From positions 1 through 64,000 of IMG/VR virus record IMGVR_UViG_3300020178_000002: a DNA stretch of 64,000 bases; one strand, 5' to 3'. The notes beneath the pieces were generated by a model. That model searched no databases. It had not been told where the DNA came from and saw only the letters and a program-made list of their open reading frames with translations. The position numbers and the translations under genes were made by a program. Numbering within the stretch: the first letter of the stretch is position 1; every line of letters begins with the position of its first letter. Positions 3,405 through 30,426 of the stretch are shown here, one piece after another.

Positions 3405-3593
3405 ATGTGGCACTTAGAAAAAATAGTCGAGATGAACCAGCCAAAAGACGAACCACCTAAGGAAAAAGAAATCCAGCTAGAGACTGAAGATCTCCTTCTT
3501 ATTAAAGAAGAGCTTAGGAAGTCTAAGGAGCTTTTGTTAGAGTTGAGAGAGCTGGTAAAGGGTACTCGAGAGATACTAAAAAATAATAGCTGA
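3405..3593 (+). CDS. small coiled-coil protein
   Basis: AAGGAG SD; heptad-rich 62-aa ORF. Confidence 0.65.
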   Translation: MWHLEKIVEMNQPKDEPPKEKEIQLETEDLLLIKEELRKSKELLLELRELVKGTREILKNNS

Positions 3594-5325: not shown

Positions 5326-5933
5326 GGGATCAGATCTCTTCTGTCTAGTTTAATTGCAATAGTTTTTTGAATATCTTTTTTTATATTAGAGACTTTCCTA
5401 GCCTCCCAGCCAAACATTCTTGCAATATGTGACATTTTAAATCCTTGCATGATAGCATCAAAGACTTTTAGGTGGTCTTCTTTGAATGAAAGCCTAATTT
5501 CGTTCATAAAGATCTTGTCAGAAGGGTCTTCTTCATAAGAGGAATCGTATGAGGTTGCTACATCATCATCCACTCCTACAAAGTATCTTTCCCTTTCTTT
5601 CCTGTGTTTGTTAATGATGTTCATAATAACACAGTCCATCACAAGAACAACATAAGTAGAGAGAGCCGACTTATCAGAGTCGAAAGGGCATTTACCTTTG
5701 TTTCTTATGAGGATGCCTTTATATACTTCATGTAGAACTTCTTCTGGGTCTAACCCCTCTCTAATCATACTTTGAGCTTGTCTCTTATAGAAGATTAGCT
5801 TGATATCTTCACTATGCTTCTCTATATCAACCCCTAGTTTTTTAGGTTTCTTGGGTTTGAATGTAAAAGAAAAAATAGATACCATTCCTTTGTGCCATAT
5901 TTTTTGTGGTTGGAGTTGGGTATAGTCAAACAT
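5319..5933 (-). CDS. phage RNA polymerase sigma factor (sigma70/ECF-like; start uncertain)
   Basis: Region-2-like EEVLHEVYKGIL...FDSDKSALSTYV..VM; C-terminal HTH GFKMSHIARMFGWEARKVSNIK. Confidence 0.7.
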   Translation of the reverse strand: MFDYTQLQPQKIWHKGMVSIFSFTFKPKKPKKLGVDIEKHSEDIKLIFYKRQAQSMIREGLDPEEVLHEVYKGILIRNKGKCPFDSDKSALSTYVVLVMDCVIMNIINKHRKERERYFVGVDDDVATSYDSSYEEDPSDKIFMNEIRLSFKEDHLKVFDAIMQGFKMSHIARMFGWEARKVSNIKKDIQKTIAIKLDRRDLIPC

Positions 5934-14481: not shown

Positions 14482-14596
14482 ATTTTCTCCTAATCTTTTT
14501 TACTTTTGTTGGTCATAAAGAGATAAAAAGATACCCCCCTTATTATCTTTGATAACTAACCTTATCAAAAACTGTATAGATTATAAGGAGAAAACT

Positions 14597-15028
14597 ATGA
14601 TTTACTTACTATCAAAGGAAGAGCTTGAGTCTCTTCGAGAAGATATTAACAATCAACTTAAAATGTTTGAACCAGATTCTACTCGTGGGGCTAAATTCAA
14701 AGAAGCTCTTGATCAGTTAGTGTTGGATGTTGAAGAAGCAGAGGAAAAGGACTTTAAAAGCCTTCGAGAGCTGGATAAGCGACTTGGAGAGCTTGAGGCA
14801 GATCCTTACTACTCAAAGTTGTATAAGCGAGATTTAGACTCATTGTTTATGAGCATTGTAATCAAGCACAATGGCTTCTTTCGGGTGTTGTATATGCTGC
14901 TAGGTAAAAGGCGGTGTGGTTGGCACTTAAGCTTCAAGATGCGTAGAGTTCCTCGACATAGTGTTCGTTGGAATCTTTTCGGTCTAGGACAACAAAAAGA
15001 TTCTGATGAAGACTCTGAGATTCGATAA
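14597..15028 (+). CDS. hypothetical protein
   Basis: Start reassigned to ATG 14597 after AAGGAG. Confidence 0.7.
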   Translation: MIYLLSKEELESLREDINNQLKMFEPDSTRGAKFKEALDQLVLDVEEAEEKDFKSLRELDKRLGELEADPYYSKLYKRDLDSLFMSIVIKHNGFFRVLYMLLGKRRCGWHLSFKMRRVPRHSVRWNLFGLGQQKDSDEDSEIR

Positions 15029-15919: not shown

Positions 15920-16420
15920 ATGGCTGTAGCTTTTAAAAGAAACCAAATACTAGGCAGGGGAGACTTAGATATCTTCCTCACTAATTCAAATGGCAATGTC
16001 TCAAATGCTGCCGAGATTACTTATGCCCTTTACTTTGTAGAGCCTGGACCACCAGAAGCAGATGTTCTTATCGGTGATCCACAGCGTATTCCAGAGAACC
16101 CATCTGTTGGGGAATACTATGCTTCTGTTAGGATTCCTACAACAGCTACTTATGGTAGATACAGGATAAGGTGGACTCTTAAAGAGTTTGTTAATAGTAA
16201 CTCACAGACAGTAGTACAAGAGTTTGGTGTTGTTGCAGAAAATGCTGTTTTGGGTCTTCAGCTTACAGAAGCTCAGAAGTCTATGGTCTATAAGTTGCGT
16301 ATGCTTTTAAGAGATCAGTGTCTTGCTGGAGAAGAACTCGTCACTGTTGATGCTGACGGTGAAAAGATCACACTCCCTATCGAAGAACTATATGACATCA
16401 TAGGAGATGGAAATGCTTGA
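15920..16420 (+). CDS. N-half of a fractured putative head-tail adaptor: 133-aa N-extein + 33-aa IntN
   Basis: Ends ...LRMLLRDQ|CLAGEELVTVDADGEKITLPIEELYDIIGDGNA*: intein block A plus an IEEL motif. Confidence 0.85.
   Translation: MAVAFKRNQILGRGDLDIFLTNSNGNVSNAAEITYALYFVEPGPPEADVLIGDPQRIPENPSVGEYYASVRIPTTATYGRYRIRWTLKEFVNSNSQTVVQEFGVVAENAVLGLQLTEAQKSMVYKLRMLLRDQCLAGEELVTVDADGEKITLPIEELYDIIGDGNA
16319..16417 (+). other. short split-intein N-fragment (IntN, 33 aa)
   Basis: Cys1 at 16319; CLAG...PIEELYD; no block B in this fragment. Confidence 0.85.
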
Positions 16421-17282
16421 AGAACTGCTAGTTAAGTTTGACCTCACAATAGAGCAACTGAACAAAAAAGGTCGAGTAGCTAAAGAGATTGTAGAAAAGC
16501 GTTCTGCTCTTGTTTCACATCTCCATAAGCAAGGGTTCTCTTGGAAAGAGATGACCGAAATCACAGGTCTTTCCAACGGGTCTATTCAGAGGCTGACCAA
16601 AGCGAAAGGCTGTAAAGCTGTTCAAGACAAACGCAAGAAGTTAGGTGCTAACGCTGGTCGATCCACCAAAGGTATGGATAGGTCTGAGCAACTAAAAAAA
16701 CAATGGGCTAAAGGAGACTTTGATTTCCATCGGGGGAGAGTTCGACCACAACATGAGCGTGATAAACTTAAAAAGGCTTGGGAAGATCCCAAACTTAGAT
16801 TGTTAGCCTCCGAGAACGCTAAGAAGTATGTGTGGGGAAATTCAGATGTGAAACAGAAGCTCATGGACTTTCACCACGATCCCGAAGAAAGAGCAAGGAG
16901 ATCGAACGCTCAAGCGATTAGGATGAAAGAGAACCCGACACCTTACCTTAGAGGCAAAACCTCAATAGAGGCTACACCTAAAGGTACTAAAGATGAGGTT
17001 CGTGTTCGCTCAAGCTATGAAGCAAAGACAATCTCCATCTTAGAGTCCGACCCTAATGTCAAAAGCTATACCTATGAGCCAATATACAAAGTTGCTGGAA
17101 GAACAATACTCCCCGACTTTGTTGTCCACTATCAAGATGGATCTACTACTCTTGTTGAAGTTAAACCACAATGGGCTTTAAACCGAGAAGATGTTATCGC
17201 CAGGTTAGCCCTATCTCAAAAAGTTGCTGATGATAATGGTTGGTCTTACCAAACATGGACTGAAAAGGAGTTGGGACTATGA
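16413..17282 (+). mobile_element. free-standing putative homing endonuclease (HTH + basic repeats + TnsA-N-like PD-(D/E)XK)
   Basis: GFSWKEMTEITGLSNGSIQRL HTH; RSSYE...YTYEP...PDFVVHYQDG..LVEVKP; AGGAG SD inside the IntN coding region (alternative ATG 16407); stop overlaps the next ATG (ATGA). Confidence 0.8.
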
Positions 17283-17665
17283 CATCTCAAGAACAAGCAC
17301 AGAAGATTAAAGACGCTTTCAAAAAAAGGAAGCTATCAATCAAATCTATGGACACTCAAGGTGATTTCTCTTGGAAGCAAATCTCTAAAGCTCATAAGAA
17401 CCCGACACCTATTGAACCCATTTATAAAATCACCACAGAGCAAGGTAAACATCTCACTATCACAGGTGGACACCGAGTCTATATGTCTCCTAACCTTTGT
17501 GTTCCAGCAGAGGAGCTGTCCGTAGGACTTAGCTTACAGACATCACAAGGAGCAACTAAGATTTCCAATATCGAGGTCATCGAAAACAGACCCTTTATGT
17601 TCGACCTTACTGTTGAGGAGAACCATAACCTTGTACTCGAAGGTTCTGATGTGGTCGTTCATAAC
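17279..17665 (+). other. long split-intein C-fragment (IntC)
   Basis: Contains block B (TxxH), block F and terminal HN followed by Cys +1; lacks block A. Confidence 0.85.
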
Positions 17666-18670
17666 TGCCCAGACAAGTATTACCATTTTAGGCCACCAGA
17701 GCATGAGGCTAACATCGGTTCTTATAATCAAGTCTTTGGTCAAGTTTGGGAAGATGAAGAGTTTCTTGAGTACCTTGAGCGAGCACTCGACTGGTGGAAC
17801 ATGCAACCGCCAGAGACAGAGGATCTTCACACATTAGATCAGCTTGTTGCTCAGAAGCCTGCATGGAGAACACCTATTTTACAGGGTGCTATTCAGTTTG
17901 CAGCAATGGCATTACAGGCAAATTGGATTGTAGATGAATTCTCGGTTAGAGGAGATACTGACTTGGAGGTTTTACTTCCTAGTGGAGAAAAGGTCAAGCT
18001 CACTATTGAGGAGCTACATGAGATTATAAAAGAGGAGCGTATGATGGATAATTTGACCAAACAAGCAATCAAACAGGCTTTCTTACAAGGAGAGCTTAAG
18101 GTTCTTTCCGTTGATAATGAAACCAGCCAAGTAGGCTACCAAGTGATTTCTGATGTGATGAAGCACCATACTCCACATAAAAAGATACTAAAAGTAGAAC
18201 TCGATAATGGGCAGTTCGTTATTGCTACTCAAGACCATTCCCTCTTCACCATTGAAGAGGGCAAGATCAAATCCATTGAAACAGAAAACTTTTCTGTTGG
18301 AGACACCCTCGCTATCGTTGAGGGTGGTGAAGTTAAAGGGTGTATTATCACTAACATCTCTCAAGAGGAAGACTGTGAATACACTTATGATCTTTGTGTG
18401 CCTATAAACGAGAACTTCGTACTTGCTAATGGCATACTAGCACACAACTCATACTCTATTGGAGGTATTTCTCTCGACATAGACAGGTCTAGTAAGTACG
18501 AGGGTTTGAAATCCTCAGCAGAGCAGATGTGGTCTACTTCTGTAGAAGCCAAGGCTAGAACAACAAAGTTCATAAGGGGTTTGAGGCAACCGAAATATGG
18601 TGTGGGAATAAGATCGAGTTTTGGGCCTGCGGTGGGTCGTGGTGTATTGAGTCCGAGAAACTTTATTTGA
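17279..18670 (+). CDS. C-half of the fractured adaptor: IntC (129 aa) + extein (92) + cis intein (169) + extein (73)
   Basis: TITGGH...FDLTVEENHNLV...VVVHN|C and a second SVRG...ATQDH...YDLCV..NENFVLANGILAHN|S. Extein motifs W.DEEFLEYL..AL.WWN..PP.T and F|SYSIGG.SL.IDRS resemble phage neck/adaptor proteins. Confidence 0.85.
   Translation: MTSQEQAQKIKDAFKKRKLSIKSMDTQGDFSWKQISKAHKNPTPIEPIYKITTEQGKHLTITGGHRVYMSPNLCVPAEELSVGLSLQTSQGATKISNIEVIENRPFMFDLTVEENHNLVLEGSDVVVHNCPDKYYHFRPPEHEANIGSYNQVFGQVWEDEEFLEYLERALDWWNMQPPETEDLHTLDQLVAQKPAWRTPILQGAIQFAAMALQANWIVDEFSVRGDTDLEVLLPSGEKVKLTIEELHEIIKEERMMDNLTKQAIKQAFLQGELKVLSVDNETSQVGYQVISDVMKHHTPHKKILKVELDNGQFVIATQDHSLFTIEEGKIKSIETENFSVGDTLAIVEGGEVKGCIITNISQEEDCEYTYDLCVPINENFVLANGILAHNSYSIGGISLDIDRSSKYEGLKSSAEQMWSTSVEAKARTTKFIRGLRQPKYGVGIRSSFGPAVGRGVLSPRNFI
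17942..18448 (+). other. contiguous mini-intein (Ser1...HN/Ser+1)
   Basis: 169 aa with blocks A, B, F and G; no endonuclease domain. Confidence 0.9.
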
Positions 18671-18773
18671 ACCCTATGTAGGCAGAGGAGTATTGAGGTA
18701 AGCAACGAAAGTATGGTGTTGGTATCTGTACTTTGAGTGAGTACTTTGAACCCTATGTGGGCAGAGGGGTGAG
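18666..18773 (+). repeat. relic duplicates of the adaptor gene 3' end
   Basis: tttgaaccctatgtRggcagaggRgt occurs twice (18666, 18745) and reads FEPYVGRGV; aagtatggtgttggtatc (18709) reads KYGVGI. The gene itself ends KYGVGIRSSFGPAVGRGVLS. Confidence 0.75.
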
Positions 18774-18805
18774 AAAAAAATCTTGACCACTTGCTTGCTT
18801 TTCAT

Positions 18806-18844
18806 ATAAGTTAATCTCAACTCAAGAATAAAGGATTAACTTAT
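18806..18844 (+). promoter_or_regulatory. hairpin covering the SD edge and AUG of the endonuclease gene
   Basis: Perfect 11-bp pair ataagttaatc / gattaacttat. Confidence 0.7.
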
Positions 18845-20117
18845 GGCTACTTGCCCTCACTGTAAAAGAGATTTCAAAACAGCAATAATTAGTGGTAGAC
18901 ACCGCAAGGTGTGTTGGCCAGATTGGAAGCCCCAACCAATTACACCATGTATCTGTGGACATGAATCCACATCAAACACACAGATGAAAAGACATAAGAA
19001 AGAATGCGAGGTATGGCAAGGTCGAGATAAGAAAGCGATCTCAAAGTTCAGACGCAAACAAACGATGAAGAATCGTTATGGGGTTGAGAATCCAGCCCAT
19101 AGCAAAGAGTCTGTAGAGAAGCGTAAACAGACTAACCTCAAGCGTTATGGTGCAGAGAACCCTTTCTCAAAGGAGAGTAGCCTTTTTGAAAAGGTGCAAG
19201 ATGCTCTTGATGGTAAGCGACCAGTCTTAAAGGGTAAGGATAACCCTTTTGCTTGGGAGAGCGTACAGGATAAGATCAAGCAGACGAACCTTGAGAGATA
19301 TGGTGTGGTCAACCCTCAACAGAATGATGTGGTCAAGGCTAAGACAGAGGCTACTAATCTTGAGAGGTATGGTGGAACGCTATTGGGATCACCAGAGCTT
19401 AGGGCTAAGATTGAGGCAACGAATATAGAGCGTTATGGTGTGCCTATCCCTAGCATGAGTAAAGAAGTCATGGATAGGGTTGTAGCGACTAATATGGAGC
19501 GATATGGTGTACCTTATACGAGTGCAGTGGGGGAGTTTAGACAGAAGCAACTCAAGACGATGATTGAGAACTATGGAAGCCACTACTTTGCGTCTGAGCA
19601 AGGCAAGGGGGAGATTAGGGCTACGATGGTGGATCGTTATGGTGTTGAGTTTCCTGGTGCTATTGATGGTCATTGGGATAAGGTGCAAGAGACATTGAAA
19701 GATAGGTATGGTGTGGAGTTCCCTATCTTGCTTATGAATCAGAAAGAGATGAACAAGTTTGAGTCAAGGGTAGCCTCATATAGCGACTCGCTCACCTTTA
19801 CAGGTAATGGTGCATATTGGAGATTTCTTCCAAGCAAGAAGAACTTTGATGGCTCGATTGGTGGCTACAAGAATCCAGACTTTGTAGTTTGTGTGAGTGA
19901 TGATCCCGAACATCCTTACATGGGTGCCACAAAGGTAGTGGAGTGTTTTGGTCAGTATTGGCACTCACAAGCGTTAACAGGGATGAGTAAAGAGGAGCAT
20001 GAGCGTAATACGATAGAGGCTTATGCGGAGGTAGGGCTTGATTGCCTTGTGATTTGGGAGGGAGACATTCGTTCAGATGAGGGTTCAGTGATTGAGAAGG
20101 TGGAGAGGTTCTGCTAG
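18843..20117 (+). mobile_element. putative homing endonuclease: Zn fingers + TNLERYGV repeats + Vsr-like C-terminal nuclease
   Basis: CPHC..H...C and CICG..H...C; about nine T(N/M)xxRYG repeats; NPDFVV...VVECFGQYWH...GLDCLVIWE. Confidence 0.75.
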
Positions 20118-20240
20118 TCAGATGCTTGATGAGCTTCAGAGAGAAATAGATTCTCTAAAGAGAGACCTAAATAAAAAACCCCCCCCAGAATCCTATTGAT
20201 AAGAGGTGTATTACAATAACTATTATTAAAAGGATTTTAT

Positions 20241-21185
20241 ATGAACATTTCTAAAAATCATTTATCTGAGGCATTCCCCCTTGAAGGTCAAAACCCATTA
20301 AAATGTGAGCCATTGGCTTTTAGAGGAACTGTTGAGGATATTGACTTTGAAGAAAGTGACTTTGAAGGTATTACTGCGTTAAACACTTATTATAAAGGTG
20401 TGCATTTTAAAGGTTGTACTTTCAATCTTACTTCTTTTTTCAAGTTTGTGGACTGCACTTTCACTGATGTTTCTTTTAAATACATCAGTGAAGAACGCTA
20501 TAAGAAAGATAATGAAGAAGATAGGAGAAGTCTCTTTATCAACTGCAAGTTTGTAAACACAACTTTTAAAAAAGTAAGTCTGGCTGGTGTAAGATTTGAT
20601 AATTGCAGTTTAGAGAACATCGCAATCATATCTTCATGTTTTGAAGCAGTTGATTTTGAGACTTCAACCTTAAAGAATGTGAAGTTTGTAAGCTGTTTTG
20701 TTAAGAACCTCTTGGTTTCAAGTGGAGAAAAAGTTTCTTTTGTTGCCTGTAAGACTACTGCAAACAAACATAAGCCAGCCACAATTGAGTTTCTAAATAC
20801 ACGAAGCAATTCTAAACAGAAGATTGTTAGCCCTAAGTTAGAGCTGCTGGATGCAACAGATAACCAAAGCCATGTCTTTGCAGGGAAGGGTGCATATAAC
20901 CAATATGTTGCTTTTCAGCAACATAGGACATATTCTTATTTTTATGCAACTACCTTAAAAAGATTATATGAGAAAGCCAGATTAGCCGCCCCACAGGGGT
21001 TACATCTTCACGAAAAACTAAAACTTCTTGATGAGAAAGACGCAAGGGAAAAGAAAGCCTTTCGGAAGAAGCTGAGAAAAAATATTCTTGGGCTTATCCT
21101 TATTGGACTTAGTTCCTATCTTCTATATTCAAATCAAGAAGCTGTTCTTCAGTCTATTGAATACCTTAAAAACCTTAGCTTCTAA
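20241..21185 (+). CDS. pentapeptide repeat protein with C-terminal TM anchor
   Basis: HFKGCTF, CTFTDVSF, CKFVNTTF, VRFDNCSL repeats; ILGLILIGLSSYLLY. Confidence 0.8.
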   Translation: MNISKNHLSEAFPLEGQNPLKCEPLAFRGTVEDIDFEESDFEGITALNTYYKGVHFKGCTFNLTSFFKFVDCTFTDVSFKYISEERYKKDNEEDRRSLFINCKFVNTTFKKVSLAGVRFDNCSLENIAIISSCFEAVDFETSTLKNVKFVSCFVKNLLVSSGEKVSFVACKTTANKHKPATIEFLNTRSNSKQKIVSPKLELLDATDNQSHVFAGKGAYNQYVAFQQHRTYSYFYATTLKRLYEKARLAAPQGLHLHEKLKLLDEKDAREKKAFRKKLRKNILGLILIGLSSYLLYSNQEAVLQSIEYLKNLSF

Positions 21186-21223: not shown

Positions 21224-21261
21224 AGGCACATACTCCATCTTTGGGGTGTGTGCCTTTTTTT
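21224..21261 (+). terminator. intrinsic terminator
   Basis: aggcacatactcca-tctt-tggggtgtgtgcct followed by a T-run. Confidence 0.8.
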
Positions 21262-21304
21262 GTCTTTATATATTTTTTTAGATAAGTATATCAAGGAGAA
21301 GAAA

Positions 21305-21733
21305 ATGAAAATAAACAATAAGATAGAAAACCTTGAGAATCGCATCGCCAAGCTAGAGGTTCAAAGTGCCCTCAACGATCCTTTCCTCAAAATTATAGGA
21401 CCTACTGACCCAGAAGCAATCGCAGATTACCTTGAGTTTAATTCTAGGGGGGTTGCTTATATTGAGGATGATAGGTTATTCGCTAGTAAAATCATGAAGC
21501 GACCTCAGCTCATTCTTGATGAGTTGATTTTGATTGAGTGGAGAAAAATGGGCTATGGTGGTAGGGCTGGAGAGAGAAATGAGTTCGGTGAGGTCATGTA
21601 TGATGAGATGGATGATTGGGTGGCTTCTGGTGCTCGTAAAAGGTATGAAAAATACAAGAGGTCTAAGCTCATTGTGAAGCAAGTAGTGTCACCAAGAACG
21701 GGTAAGAATGGTTGGGTTTTAACTCTGAAATAA
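21305..21733 (+). CDS. leader-family protein
   Basis: Start reassigned: MKINNKIENLENRIAKLEVQS after AAGGAG. Confidence 0.75.
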   Translation: MKINNKIENLENRIAKLEVQSALNDPFLKIIGPTDPEAIADYLEFNSRGVAYIEDDRLFASKIMKRPQLILDELILIEWRKMGYGGRAGERNEFGEVMYDEMDDWVASGARKRYEKYKRSKLIVKQVVSPRTGKNGWVLTLK

Positions 21734-28899: not shown

Positions 28900-30426
28900 A
28901 TGAACAACTATTATGTTACAACACCTATATATTATGTGAACGACACACCTCATATAGGTCATGCTTATACAACAATAATAGCAGACACATTAGCTCGTTG
29001 GGAAAAGATTAAAGGTAATGATACTTACTTTTTAACAGGAACTGATGAGCATGGTTTAAAGATTGAACAGTCTGCTAAAAATAAAGGTGTGTCTCCACAA
29101 GAATTAGTAGATGATGTCTCACAGAGCTTTCGAGATCTTTGTTTAAAAGTAGATAGTTCTCCTAATGACTTTATCCGTACAACTGAATCTCGACACAAAG
29201 AAGTTGTTAAAGATCTCTGGCTTAAGCTAGTAGAATCAGGTGACATTTACTTAGGAGAGTATTCAGGTTGGTATAGCGTTAATGATGAGGCTTATTTCAC
29301 AGAAGATGAAATAGTTGATGGTAAAGCACCCTCTGGTCACAAAGTTGAATGGTTAGTAGAAAAATCTTATTTCTTTAGACTTTCTAAGTACACGGATTTG
29401 CTTCTCAATCACTTTGATGAGAACCCAGACTTTATCCAGCCAAAGAAAAGACTGAATGAAGTTAGAAGTTTTGTTAAGCAAGGGTTAAAAGACATTTCTA
29501 TATCAAGAAGCACATTTTCTTGGGGTATAGAAGTTCCAGAAGACCCTGAGCATGTAATCTATGTGTGGCTTGATGCTTTAGCTAACTACATTAGTGGTTT
29601 GGGTGGTTTCGAGGGTTCTCTTTTCGAGAAGTATTGGGGAAACTCACACCATATCATTGGGAAAGATATTCTCCGATTCCATGCTGTGTATCTCCCCTGC
29701 TTCTTACTTAGCGTTGGTGAAGATCTTCCAAAGAAGATTATTGCACATGGCTGGTGGACAGCAGAGGGTGAAAAGATTAGCAAGAGCAAGGGGAATGCCA
29801 TTGACCCTAATAAAGTAATTGATGCAATAGGAAGTGATTCCTTTAGGTATTTCTTACTACGAGAGATCTCATTAGGTTCTGATGGAGACTTTAGCTATAA
29901 CTCATTAGTTTCTAGAATAAACTCTGACCTCTCTAATGAATATGGGAATCTTGTTAGTAGAACGCTAGGCTTACTTAAGAAGTATAGAGCCTCTAAGATA
30001 CCAGAGTCCTATGAGCTAGGGCTAGATGAGGTAGAATTGCTCAAGGTGATTAACTCTTCAAAGAGTGAATTAGAGCTTGCCTTTGACAACTACCGCTTAA
30101 ATGATGCTTTGAAAGCAATCTGGAAAGTGGTTAAGGCAGGCAATAAGTATGTGAACGACACAGCACCTTGGGTTCTCTACAAAGAGGGTAAAGATAAAGA
30201 CCTAGATAGGGTTTTATACACTCTTGTAGAGCTCTTAAGAGTCATTGGTATTTGGACTTCTCCTTTCTTGCCAACTTCTTCAAAGAAGCTTTTAGATAGT
30301 CTTGGAGTGGTCAATAGAGATTTCCAATCTTCTATTAAGTGGTTTGTATTAAAGCCCAACACCGAAATCAAAGACTCTTTGCAACTGTTTCCTCGCTTAA
30401 ATCTAAAACCAGAGGACATCAAATAA
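28900..30426 (+). CDS. metG: methionyl-tRNA synthetase (short form)
   Basis: YYVTTPIYYVNDTPHIGHAY, LTGTDEHGLKI, FIRTT, YVWLDAL.NY, IGKDILRFH, KISKSKGN, anticodon domain with APW. Confidence 0.97.
   Translation: MNNYYVTTPIYYVNDTPHIGHAYTTIIADTLARWEKIKGNDTYFLTGTDEHGLKIEQSAKNKGVSPQELVDDVSQSFRDLCLKVDSSPNDFIRTTESRHKEVVKDLWLKLVESGDIYLGEYSGWYSVNDEAYFTEDEIVDGKAPSGHKVEWLVEKSYFFRLSKYTDLLLNHFDENPDFIQPKKRLNEVRSFVKQGLKDISISRSTFSWGIEVPEDPEHVIYVWLDALANYISGLGGFEGSLFEKYWGNSHHIIGKDILRFHAVYLPCFLLSVGEDLPKKIIAHGWWTAEGEKISKSKGNAIDPNKVIDAIGSDSFRYFLLREISLGSDGDFSYNSLVSRINSDLSNEYGNLVSRTLGLLKKYRASKIPESYELGLDEVELLKVINSSKSELELAFDNYRLNDALKAIWKVVKAGNKYVNDTAPWVLYKEGKDKDLDRVLYTLVELLRVIGIWTSPFLPTSSKKLLDSLGVVNRDFQSSIKWFVLKPNTEIKDSLQLFPRLNLKPEDIK

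What the first reader, a model, noticed from the sequence alone, without database searches (positions are those of the whole stretch)
17942..18448. Second intein is a contiguous paralog with an internal RBS and Met-Met at the exact split point
Seen: residues 1-33 (SVRGDTDLEVLLPSGEKVKLTIEELHEIIKEER) align with IntN (CLAGEELVTVDADGEKITLPIEELYDIIGDGNA, also 33 aa). Residue 34 onward (MMDNLTKQAIKQAFLQGELKVLSVD) aligns with the IntC start (MTSQEQAQKIKDAFKKRKLSIKSMD). DNA at the seam is aaaGAGGAGcgtATGATG (18032-18046), mirroring AGGAGatggaaATG at the end of IntN. Inference: either a re-fused, formerly split intein that lost its endonuclease, or a pre-split intermediate. An internal start would make a free IntC2-extein that might cross-splice with IntN1 and skip the 92-aa middle extein, i.e. 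alternative protein splicing.
Basis: partly seen in the sequence, partly recalled or inferred. Interest (0 to 1): 0.85.

Follow-up and report, generated by a model that had tools for sequence, protein, structure and literature searches.

The report
Re-fused split intein with endonuclease scar
The second intein in this jumbo-phage gene was once split in two by a homing-endonuclease gene and was stitched back together by a 952-base deletion, which left the old ribosome-binding site and start codon of the downstream half inside the reading frame.

Summary
Window 17942-18448 encodes an intact 169-aa mini-intein (Ser1...His-Asn|Ser+1). It is a colinear paralog (31% identity, E=6e-18) of the split intein upstream. 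GAGGAGcgtATGATG sits at the paralog's split point.

Relatives explain it. In at least 7 close relatives and hundreds of distant ones this intein is split at exactly this seam. A Vsr-like homing endonuclease gene (HEG) of 307-327 aa lies between the halves in the five loci with an intact HEG that were read. The window seam equals a relative's IntN tail up to AGGAG, joined to that relative's HEG 3' tail from AGGAG onward (AGGAGCGTATGATGGA, exact match to L004). This is a 952-nt deletion between two 5-nt microhomologies.

So residues R33-M34 are HEG-tail sequence read in another frame. ATG 18044 is the old IntC start, and AGGAG is its Shine-Dalgarno.

Internal initiation is plausible but untested. 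Cross-splicing with IntN1 ("alternative protein splicing") has no support.

This is a new variant of a known kind: fractured genes (Dassa 2009) and atypically split inteins.

The parts
15920..16318 (+). N-extein (133 aa) of the host gene, a conserved 298-aa jumbo-phage protein of unknown function
   Evidence: Intein-free 298-aa homologs align end to end.
16319..16420 (+). IntN1: 33-aa N-fragment of split intein 1 (Cys1) plus stop. Its tail overlaps the RBS and start of HEG1.
16407..17282 (+). HEG1: free-standing endonuclease gene between the halves of intein 1, with an N-terminal HTH and a TnsA-like PD-(D/E)xK nuclease. Its 3' end carries the SD (17266-17270) and overlaps the IntC1 start (ATGA).
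   Evidence: Pfam PF08722 E=2.3e-8 and PHROG endonuclease hits. Reduced to a remnant in L004 and absent in L002 and L010.
17279..17665 (+). IntC1: 129-aa C-fragment of split intein 1 (...VVVHN | Cys+1)
17666..17941 (+). Middle extein (92 aa, CPDKYY...IVDEF)
17942..18448 (+). Int2: contiguous 169-aa class-1 mini-intein (Ser1, T96-x-x-H99, H168-N169, Ser+1). This is the finding.
   Evidence: Pfam E=7e-23. AF2 pLDDT 97.4, pTM 0.91. Foldseek TM 0.75-0.81 to mini-inteins. Invariant S1/H99/H168/N169 in 44 homologs.
17942..18037 (+). IntN2-derived part (residues 1-32), homologous to the 35-aa IntN2 fragments of split relatives
18033..18037 (+). AGGAG: the deletion junction. This 5-nt microhomology is present both in the IntN2 tail and in the HEG2 3' tail of split relatives. 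It is also the former Shine-Dalgarno of IntC2.
   Evidence: L004 left flank matches up to here, right flank from here on..
18038..18043 (+). CGTATG: relic of the HEG2 3' coding end (...R-S-V-stop in the HEG frame), now read as Arg33-Met34 of the intein
   Evidence: Exact match to L004 (AGGAGCGTATGATGGA), one mismatch to L001/L002/L010.
18044..18448 (+). IntC2-derived part (residues 35-169). ATG 18044-18046 is the former IntC2 start codon.
   Evidence: 527 homologs of 205-237 aa; 113 of the 120 listed start at this position. dN/dS 0.08-0.16 against split relatives.
18449..18670 (+). C-extein (73 aa, SYSIGG...) plus stop
18843..20117 (+). Second free-standing HEG (DUF7487 repeats) just downstream of the host gene. 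It lies inside the divergent tract that also contains the seam.
   Evidence: Pfam E=1.7e-49 and PHROG homing endonuclease. Absent in L001, present in L011.

Best explanation
Int2 is a cis-splicing mini-intein that descends from an atypically split intein (IntN about 35 aa, IntC about 135 aa). The two halves were once separated by a free-standing Vsr-like homing endonuclease gene, HEG2. A 952-nt deletion between two AGGAG pentamers removed the IntN2 stop codon and all of HEG2 except its last 6 nt. One pentamer lay in the IntN2 tail and the other in the HEG2 3' tail, where it served as the SD of IntC2. The deletion joined the halves in frame. The internal 'RBS + Met-Met' is therefore a scar: AGGAG is the old SD, CGTATG is the HEG tail (now Arg-Met), and ATG 18044 is the old IntC2 start.

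Shown: the homology of each seam segment to split relatives, the intact intein fold and catalytic residues, and the reality of the allele in independent samples.

Inferred: the fused intein splices in cis, joining ...IVDEF to SYSIGG.... IntC1 at the N-terminus of the same precursor trans-splices with IntN1 on the ORF1 product, giving the mature 298-aa protein. The fusion arose in another lineage and was carried into this genome by recombination, because the divergent tract starts about 30 nt left of the seam.
For: (1) L001 is about 99% identical to the window on the left flank. It has IntN2 ending ...KEDGEG-stop, a 315-aa HEG (Pfam DUF559/MTES_1575/Vsr), then IntC2 starting MDNLTKQ. L004, L005, L008 and L010 have the same layout.
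(2) Junction analysis: the window matches the L004 IntN2 tail through ATAAAAGAGGAG and the L004 HEG tail from AGGAGCGTATGATGGA. The overlap is 5 nt and 952 nt are missing.
(3) The HEG tail AGGAGCGT encodes a conserved HEG C-terminus (...QRSV-stop) in L001, L004 and L010 and in the L002 remnant.
(4) 527 IntC2+C-extein proteins score E<=1e-10 at 47-89% identity, and 113 of the 120 listed start at the seam. One (P0121, locus L004) starts MMDN.
(5) HEG2 identity tracks intein identity across loci (86/89, 70/81-83, 52-57/67-79%), so the HEG is an old resident.
(6) In trees the window allele is the only contiguous member of nested, well-supported clades of split alleles (99/93, 99/96, 100/99). The nearest other contiguous Int2 is at most 50% identical.
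(7) Independent HEG decay occurs in the same gene. In L002, HEG2 is reduced to about 80 bp and the intein is still split. In L004, HEG1 is reduced to about 100 bp. In L010, intein 1 is contiguous and keeps AATGCTTG, the IntN1 tail and HEG1 start.
(8) The intein is intact: pLDDT 97.4, the seam lies in the loop between helices 22-30 and 38-48, the catalytic residues are invariant, and dN/dS is 0.08-0.16.
(9) The allele occurs in at least 10 salt-marsh runs, a 2021 marine run and three public contigs of 50-312 kb.
Against: The AU test does not reject a tree in which the 7 split relatives form one clade excluding the window (delta lnL 24.4, p=0.148), so nesting rests on bootstrap support only. The trees are unrooted, and the locus is recombinant: synonymous divergence (dS) from L001 is 0.013 left of the seam and 0.23-0.35 right of it. 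That weakens any tree-based polarity. The uniquely HEG-derived stretch is short (6 nt beyond the AGGAG). A two-state comparison cannot by itself tell deletion from insertion. No direct parent allele, identical on both flanks with the HEG present, was found. Splicing activity was not tested.
Confidence: 0.85

Rival explanations
1. Pre-split or HEG-naive allele. The window shows the contiguous state into which the HEG2 cassette inserts, and the SD and ATG happened to pre-exist, which made a viable split possible.
For: A two-allele comparison is symmetric between insertion and deletion. The AU test does not reject the window being sister to all 7 split relatives. The split/contiguous state flips often on the tree: at least 29 changes, at least 9 of them forced by well-supported branches. 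HEGs do home into HEG-less alleles.
Against: Split alleles with an orthologous, co-diverged HEG at the same position extend to relatives far more distant than the window-L001 pair. No other contiguous allele above 50% identity exists among the hits. Of the 43 contiguous relatives only 3-4 have a Met near the seam, about chance level, and the two checked at DNA level have no SD. AGGAGCGT is HEG coding sequence (conserved ...QRSV-stop). Dassa 2009 (PMC2677866) argue that the invading element brings the downstream Met. This reading would also need a 5-nt AGGAG duplication flanking the cassette.
Confidence: 0.07
2. Functional dual expression. Whatever its origin, the internal SD and ATG are kept because initiation at 18044 makes a free IntC2-C-extein that has a use. 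One possibility is trans-splicing with IntN1 to give an isoform lacking the 92-aa middle extein, i.e. 'alternative protein splicing'.
For: The initiation region is identical to the working one of L004 from -11 to +8. It is predicted to be unstructured. 27 of 41 window genes use such SDs. IntN1 and IntN2 share GEK-x-x-L-x-IEEL-x-x-II. A Cys1/Ser+1 pair is chemically acceptable for inteins (general knowledge).
Against: No translation data exist. All known copies of the fused allele are 99.7-100% identical, so retention of the motif needs no selection. In L001 and L004 both inteins are split in one three-piece gene (L005 and L008 carry the same IntC1+mid+IntN2 piece), which requires the two pairs not to cross-react. 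In cis, IntC2 is already occupied by its own IntN2. A product lacking a conserved third of the protein is unlikely to be useful.
Confidence: 0.04
3. Assembly chimera. The fused seam is an artefact of joining reads from split-allele strains.
For: The locus is strain-variable and contigs break near it in some runs.
Against: The shared sequence at the junction is only 5 nt, far below any assembler k-mer. Independent contigs from different years and studies span the seam, including one 3,320-nt contig at 37x depth with 0 differences. Three public contigs of 50-312 kb carry ORF3 identically.
Confidence: 0.01

Closest known systems
'Fractured genes': split inteins with a free-standing Vsr-like homing endonuclease gene between the halves (Dassa et al. 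2009, PMC2677866), including the HEG-less split locus gp41-7
   Same: Relatives of Int2 (L001, L004, L005, L008, L010) have exactly this layout, as read in L001 and L004: the IntN stop overlaps the HEG start (TAATG), the HEG is Vsr/DUF559-like, and the HEG 3' end overlaps the IntC start and carries its SD. L002 matches their step III (HEG lost, still split). The setting is phage and metagenomic.
   Different: The window's Int2 is no longer fractured. It is a state absent from their model: the HEG was deleted and the intein halves re-joined into a mini-intein that keeps the cassette's SD and Met. Their step IIIa re-creates a contiguous gene by putting the HEG in frame, not by losing it. The split site here is the atypical N-proximal one. 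The HEG inside intein 1 of the window is TnsA-like, not Vsr-like.
Naturally atypically split inteins with a short IntN (AceL-TerL 25/104 aa, GOS-TerL 37/115 aa, Cat-TerL consensus 30/104; Thiel 2014, Bachmann & Mootz 2015, as summarised in PMC11766414 and PMC11923092)
   Same: The fragment sizes are similar: intein 1 is 33/129 aa, and split relatives of Int2 are about 35/135 aa. The split is N-proximal, in the loop after the first helix rather than at the canonical endonuclease site. The source is phage or environmental.
   Different: The host protein is different (an uncharacterised 298-aa virion-type protein, not terminase). Int2 uses Ser1/Ser+1. No sequence relationship to the TerL inteins was tested. 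Those inteins are called rare, whereas here more than 500 split homologs were found.
Mini-inteins produced by loss of an in-frame endonuclease domain in the homing cycle (Gogarten & Hilario 2006, as cited in bioRxiv 10.1101/2025.01.02.630785); nearest solved examples are the CDC21-1 mini-inteins 6RPP/6RPQ
   Same: The end product is the same: a compact HINT domain without an endonuclease, with empty, HEG-bearing and HEG-less alleles co-existing in one population.
   Different: Here the lost endonuclease was a separate gene in another frame and the intermediate was a split gene. The loss had to restore the reading frame, and it left translation signals inside the ORF.
Engineered fusions of split inteins (e.g. 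fused Aes123 PolB1, PDB 9HTH; fused NrdJ-1, 8UBS)
   Same: IntN and IntC are joined by a short linker into one folded HINT domain. The Int2 model matches 9HTH at TM 0.75.
   Different: Those fusions are man-made for crystallography. This one arose naturally, and the linker is leftover HEG and RBS sequence.

Membership tests
Class 1 cis-splicing mini-intein (HINT domain) | HINT fold | tested here: met
   Pfam Intein_splicing E=7e-23. AF2 pLDDT 97.4, pTM 0.91. Foldseek E as low as 5e-12 and TM 0.75-0.81 to solved mini-inteins. phmmer against 6RPP gives E=7e-12.
Class 1 cis-splicing mini-intein (HINT domain) | Nucleophile at position 1, block B T-x-x-H, C-terminal His-Asn, nucleophile at +1 | tested here: met
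   S1, T96/H99, H168-N169 and S+1. S1, H99, H168 and N169 are invariant in 44 homologs.
Class 1 cis-splicing mini-intein (HINT domain) | In-frame insertion in a host gene for which intein-free alleles exist | tested here: met
   L011 has no mismatches to the window over 16203-17937 and then reads DEF|DYSIGG without Int2. Many 298-aa intein-free homologs exist.
Class 1 cis-splicing mini-intein (HINT domain) | Demonstrated protein splicing | not testable with these tools
   Only inferred, from the intact residues, purifying selection (dN/dS 0.08-0.16) and persistence of the allele at 37x depth across samples.
Fractured gene / naturally split intein with intervening free-standing HEG (Dassa 2009) | Intein halves on two separate ORFs | tested here: not met
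   Int2 is one uninterrupted frame in the window. The feature is met for intein 1 of the window and for Int2 in L001, L004, L005, L008 and L010.
Fractured gene / naturally split intein with intervening free-standing HEG (Dassa 2009) | Endonuclease gene between the halves, overlapping the downstream start | tested here: not met
   Only 6 nt of the HEG tail plus the SD remain at 18033-18043. Relatives keep a 307-327-aa Vsr-like HEG.
Atypically split inteins (short IntN) | IntN of about 15-40 aa and IntC over 100 aa, split N-terminal to block B | tested here: met
   This holds for the ancestral or relative state: IntN2 is 35 aa (P0003) and IntC2 is 135 aa. Intein 1 of the window is 33/129 aa. The seam is in the loop between helices 22-30 and 38-48.
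Atypically split inteins (short IntN) | Sequence kinship to the described AceL-TerL/GOS-TerL group | not tested
   No sequence of those inteins was available from a tool. The PDB sequence search returned none of them at E<=0.01.

The most novel reading that the evidence does not exclude
The scar is still an active internal start. The phage would then make both a cis-splicing precursor and a free IntC2-C-extein. The free fragment could trans-splice with IntN1 to produce a shorter isoform that skips the middle extein, which would be natural alternative protein splicing.
Probability: 0.03. Interest if true: 0.9.

Novelty: new variant of a known kind. Interest (0 to 1): 0.55.

Why it matters
Published models of split-intein evolution run one way: contiguous intein, then endonuclease invasion, then a fractured gene, then endonuclease loss, then dispersed halves. 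This locus gives sequence-level evidence for the reverse step. A fractured gene was healed by deletion of the endonuclease, with a readable scar.

It does so within a set of nearly identical phage genomes that carry the empty, split-with-HEG and re-fused alleles; a more distant relative (L002) adds the split-with-HEG-remnant allele. Two inteins of the same gene switch state independently. That makes gain, loss and reversal of gene fracture directly testable.

As a by-product, the family offers hundreds of natural atypically split inteins. It also offers natural three-piece genes with two presumably orthogonal pairs, one Cys/Cys and one Ser/Ser. These are the kinds of parts protein engineers look for.

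Tried and rejected
**Extein function.** Pfam and PHROG gave no hits for the intein-free homolog P0082. The AF2 model was mediocre (pLDDT 74.5) and Foldseek against PDB found nothing at E<=0.001. The protein atlas gave only weak leads to neck, adaptor and connector proteins. Function remains unknown.

**Phage GenBank blastn of the locus.** There was one weak hit, to a 485-kb uncultured phage, which was uninformative.

**More re-fusion scars in other contiguous Int2 alleles.** A Met near the seam occurs at about chance frequency. The two best candidates (P0040, P0074) have no SD upstream, so they are not counted as scars.

**Diverged fused alleles, to test conservation of the SD-Met.** Exact-pattern scans of viral and metagenome contigs returned only three identical copies of ORF3. 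The other 36 matching loci showed no similarity to ORF3.

**AU test for nesting.** Not significant (p=0.148).

**HEG2 against the downstream DUF7487 HEG.** BLASTP found no significant similarity, although both hit PHROG 3339.

**RNA structure masking the SD.** None was predicted.

**Assembly artefact.** Rejected.

Full report
**1. What is at the coordinates**

Three consecutive + strand ORFs encode one host protein in pieces.
- ORF1 (15920-16420) is a 133-aa N-extein plus a 33-aa IntN1 (CLAGEE...GNA-stop).
- ORF2 (16407-17282) is a 291-aa free-standing endonuclease. It has an N-terminal HTH and a TnsA-like PD-(D/E)xK nuclease (Pfam PF08722, E=2.3e-8).
- ORF3 (17279-18670) is IntC1 (129 aa, ...VVVHN), a 92-aa middle extein, Int2 (169 aa, nt 17942-18448) and a 73-aa C-extein.

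The seam DNA is AAA GAG GAG CGT ATG ATG, with GAGGAG at 18032-18037 and the two ATGs at 18041 and 18044. Pfam Intein_splicing scores E=7e-23 on ORF3.

The genome is a jumbo phage of about 312 kb from salt-marsh and marine samples. It carries a baseplate wedge homolog, a weak sheath-initiator-like match (below Pfam's cutoff), a methionyl-tRNA synthetase and several homing endonuclease genes.

**2.

IntN1+IntC1 aligns colinearly with Int2: 48/157 identical, E=6e-18. The break between IntN1 and IntC1 falls at M34|M35 of Int2.

An in-frame internal ATG behind a 5-mer SD is rare in this window. There are 6 in 19,222 codons, two of which are the seam itself and two probably true starts.

One detail needs correcting. 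The AGGAG...ATG at the end of IntN1 starts the endonuclease gene, not IntC1. The IntC1 SD lies in the 3' end of ORF2, at 17266-17270.

**3. Relatives show every state of both inteins**

A search with ORF3, followed by an architecture census, gave the following classes.
- Intein-free 298-aa proteins.
- IntC1+middle+C-extein, i.e. intein 1 split and no Int2. P0001 is 100% identical to the window up to IVDEF and then reads DYSIGG.
- IntC1+middle+IntN2, i.e. both inteins split. P0003 is 99% identical and ends ...IIKEDGEG-stop.
- Contiguous intein 1 plus split IntN2 (P0006, P0011).
- Contiguous Int2 in many distant relatives at 27-46% identity across the intein, with variable linkers and no Met-Met.
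- Both inteins contiguous (P0027 and others).

A second search with the part downstream of the seam found 527 proteins at E<=1e-10. Of the 120 listed, 113 are 205-237 aa long and begin exactly at the seam with M(L/I)D..T+.AI+.AF. P0121 begins MMDNSTKQ. The split form of Int2 is therefore common and old.

**4. What lies between the halves in relatives**

- **L001** (about 99% identical to the window upstream): the IntN2 stop overlaps the start (TAATG) of a 315-aa HEG. The HEG hits DUF559, MTES_1575 and Vsr, the family Dassa et al. described in fractured genes. Its 3' end...CAAAGGAGCGTATAATGG, overlaps the IntC2 start MDNLTKQ.
- **L004, L005-7, L008-9 and L010**: the same layout, with 307-327-aa orthologous HEGs.
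- **L002/L003**: the HEG is reduced to about 80 bp, its first 46 or so and last 35 or so nt, and the intein is still split.

**5. The seam is a deletion scar**

Laying relatives on the window shows where each flank matches. The L004 IntN2 tail matches through ...ATAAAAGAGGAG and then diverges into GGTGAGGAGTAATG, which is the IntN2 stop and HEG start. The L004 HEG tail matches from AGGAGCGTATGATGGA onward.

The two matches overlap by AGGAG (18033-18037), and 952 nt are missing. In L004 the HEG ends ...Q-Q-R-S-V-TGA and its stop overlaps ATGATG. The window carries that same 16-mer.

So window residues R33 and M34 are HEG 3' sequence read in the intein frame. ATG 18044 is the old IntC2 start and AGGAG is its SD, with the native 6-nt spacing.

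**6. Polarity**

- HEG2 identity tracks intein identity across loci: 86/89%, 70/81-83% and 52-57/67-79%. The HEG was therefore resident long before the window and L001 diverged (94% identity in IntC2+C-extein).
- In trees of IntC2+C-extein, the window allele is the only contiguous member of nested supported clades of split alleles: 2 rows at 99/93, 6 rows at 99/96 and 8 rows at 100/99.
- No other contiguous Int2 above 50% identity was found.
- Dassa et al. argue that the invading HEG element supplies the upstream stop and the downstream Met. An allele that carries that Met and SD without the HEG is therefore post-invasion.

There are caveats. The AU test does not reject the 7 split relatives forming a clade without the window (p=0.148). 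The trees are unrooted, and the locus is recombinant.

**7. Recombination context**

The window differs from L001 at only 2 positions in 16828-18009. It then differs at 18010, 18013, 18037 and 18038, and at 44 positions in 18044-18664. Synonymous divergence (dS) is 0.013 on the left and 0.23-0.35 on the right. About 99% identity resumes at 21099.

The divergent tract thus begins about 30 nt left of the seam and contains it, along with the C-extein, the DUF7487 HEG and a pentapeptide-repeat gene. The fused allele was probably made elsewhere and recombined in.

L011 has no mismatches to the window over 16203-17937 and lacks Int2 entirely. So three genomes that are about 99% identical in the flanks carry the empty, split-with-HEG and re-fused alleles.

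**8. The intein looks functional**

All 44 contiguous homologs keep S1, H99, H168 and N169; T96 is nearly invariant, and position +1 is Ser or Thr. AF2 gives pLDDT 97.4 and pTM 0.91. The seam residues 31-37 lie in the loop between helices 22-30 and 38-48, which is the least confident block at pLDDT 88. Foldseek matches mini-inteins at TM 0.75-0.81.

dN/dS of the IntC2 part is 0.16 against L001 and 0.08 against L004.

The allele is present at 37x depth in salt-marsh runs and in at least 10 such runs. It is also in a 2021 marine run and in an RNA-library contig spanning the seam. Cis-splicing is inferred, not shown.

**9. Internal initiation and cross-splicing**

The initiation region is identical to the working one of L004 from -11 to +8, and it is predicted to be unstructured. 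Some initiation at 18044 is therefore plausible. No data bear on it.

All known copies of the fused allele are 99.7-100% identical, so persistence of the motif is explained by youth alone.

Cross-splicing with IntN1 is untested. It is disfavoured because L001 and L004 run both inteins split in a three-piece gene (L005 and L008 carry the same IntC1+mid+IntN2 piece), which needs the two pairs to be orthogonal.

**10. Comparison with known systems**

The relatives are textbook fractured genes (Dassa 2009), but split at the atypical N-proximal site known from AceL-TerL and GOS-TerL.

The window allele adds a state I did not find described in the papers I could search: healing of a fractured gene by loss of the HEG, leaving a mini-intein with a translation-signal scar.

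A second probable case affects intein 1 in L010. Its contiguous seam keeps AATGCTTG, which is the IntN1 tail and HEG1 start, with TGA changed to TGT. L002 has a scar-less contiguous intein 1.

**Verdict**

The re-fusion interpretation is supported (confidence 0.85). The alternative-splicing idea is unsupported. This is a new variant of a known kind, of moderate interest.

Noticed in passing
L010:3001-4242 (seam about 3480-3510), compared with window 16401-16420: Intein 1 is contiguous in this relative. Its seam (ATAGGGGGCGACAATGCTTGTAAGATAAAA = I-G-G-D-N-A-C-K-I-K) keeps AATGCTTG, which in the window is the last IntN1 codons overlapping the HEG1 start. A TGT codon stands where the window has the TGA stop. 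This is probably a second, independent re-fusion scar, in the other intein.
   Followed up: partly
L004:3189-3290 and L002:7251-7331: These are HEG remnants with the intein still split. L004 keeps only about the first 90 and last 20 nt of the TnsA-like HEG1. L002 keeps about the first 46 and last 35 nt of the Vsr-like HEG2. They are independent internal deletions of the endonuclease genes.
   Followed up: partly
window 17941-21099, compared with L001 and L011: Three genomes that are about 99% identical on both sides differ completely in this 3-kb stretch. The differences are Int2 fused, split or absent; the DUF7487 HEG present, absent or present; and a pentapeptide-repeat gene only 69% identical. 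This is an HEG-associated recombination hot spot.
   Followed up: partly
window 17936-17944 and 18449-18451; L011 about 5657-5668: The intein-free allele reads GAGTTT|GATTAC (E-F|D-Y). The intein-bearing allele reads GAATTC|...|TCATAC (E-F|S-Y). So Asp changes to Ser at +1, and two synonymous changes sit just upstream. Likewise, site 1 has Asn in intein-free alleles and Cys+1 in the window. These look like co-converted extein flanks.
   Followed up: partly
window 18666-18691 and 18745-18770: A 26-nt direct repeat (TTTGAACCCTATGTRGGCAGAGG, 92% identical, 79 nt apart) overlaps and follows the host gene's stop. A degenerate copy of the gene's last codons lies in between. It sits upstream of the DUF7487 HEG and may be a footprint of that HEG's insertion.
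   Followed up: no
L001, L004 (whole host-gene locus); L005, L008 (middle and C-terminal pieces): These are natural three-piece genes: N-extein-IntN1 / IntC1-middle-IntN2 / IntC2-C-extein. They use two atypically split inteins, one Cys1/Cys+1 and one Ser1/Ser+1, so the pairs are presumably orthogonal. More than 500 IntC2-type fragments exist in public data, although such inteins are described as rare.
   Followed up: partly
window 16407-17282: The HEG that fractures intein 1 is a TnsA-like PD-(D/E)xK endonuclease with an N-terminal HTH. It is not the Vsr-like type reported for fractured genes.
   Followed up: no
window 14549-15028 and 21248-21733: These ORFs were listed with TTG and GTG starts. 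They more likely begin at internal ATGs preceded by AAGGAG (codons 17 and 20).
   Followed up: no
window 28900-30426; 204-1424: The phage encodes a methionyl-tRNA synthetase (Pfam E=7e-109). A GIY-YIG endonuclease gene is a further mobile nuclease in the same window.
   Followed up: no
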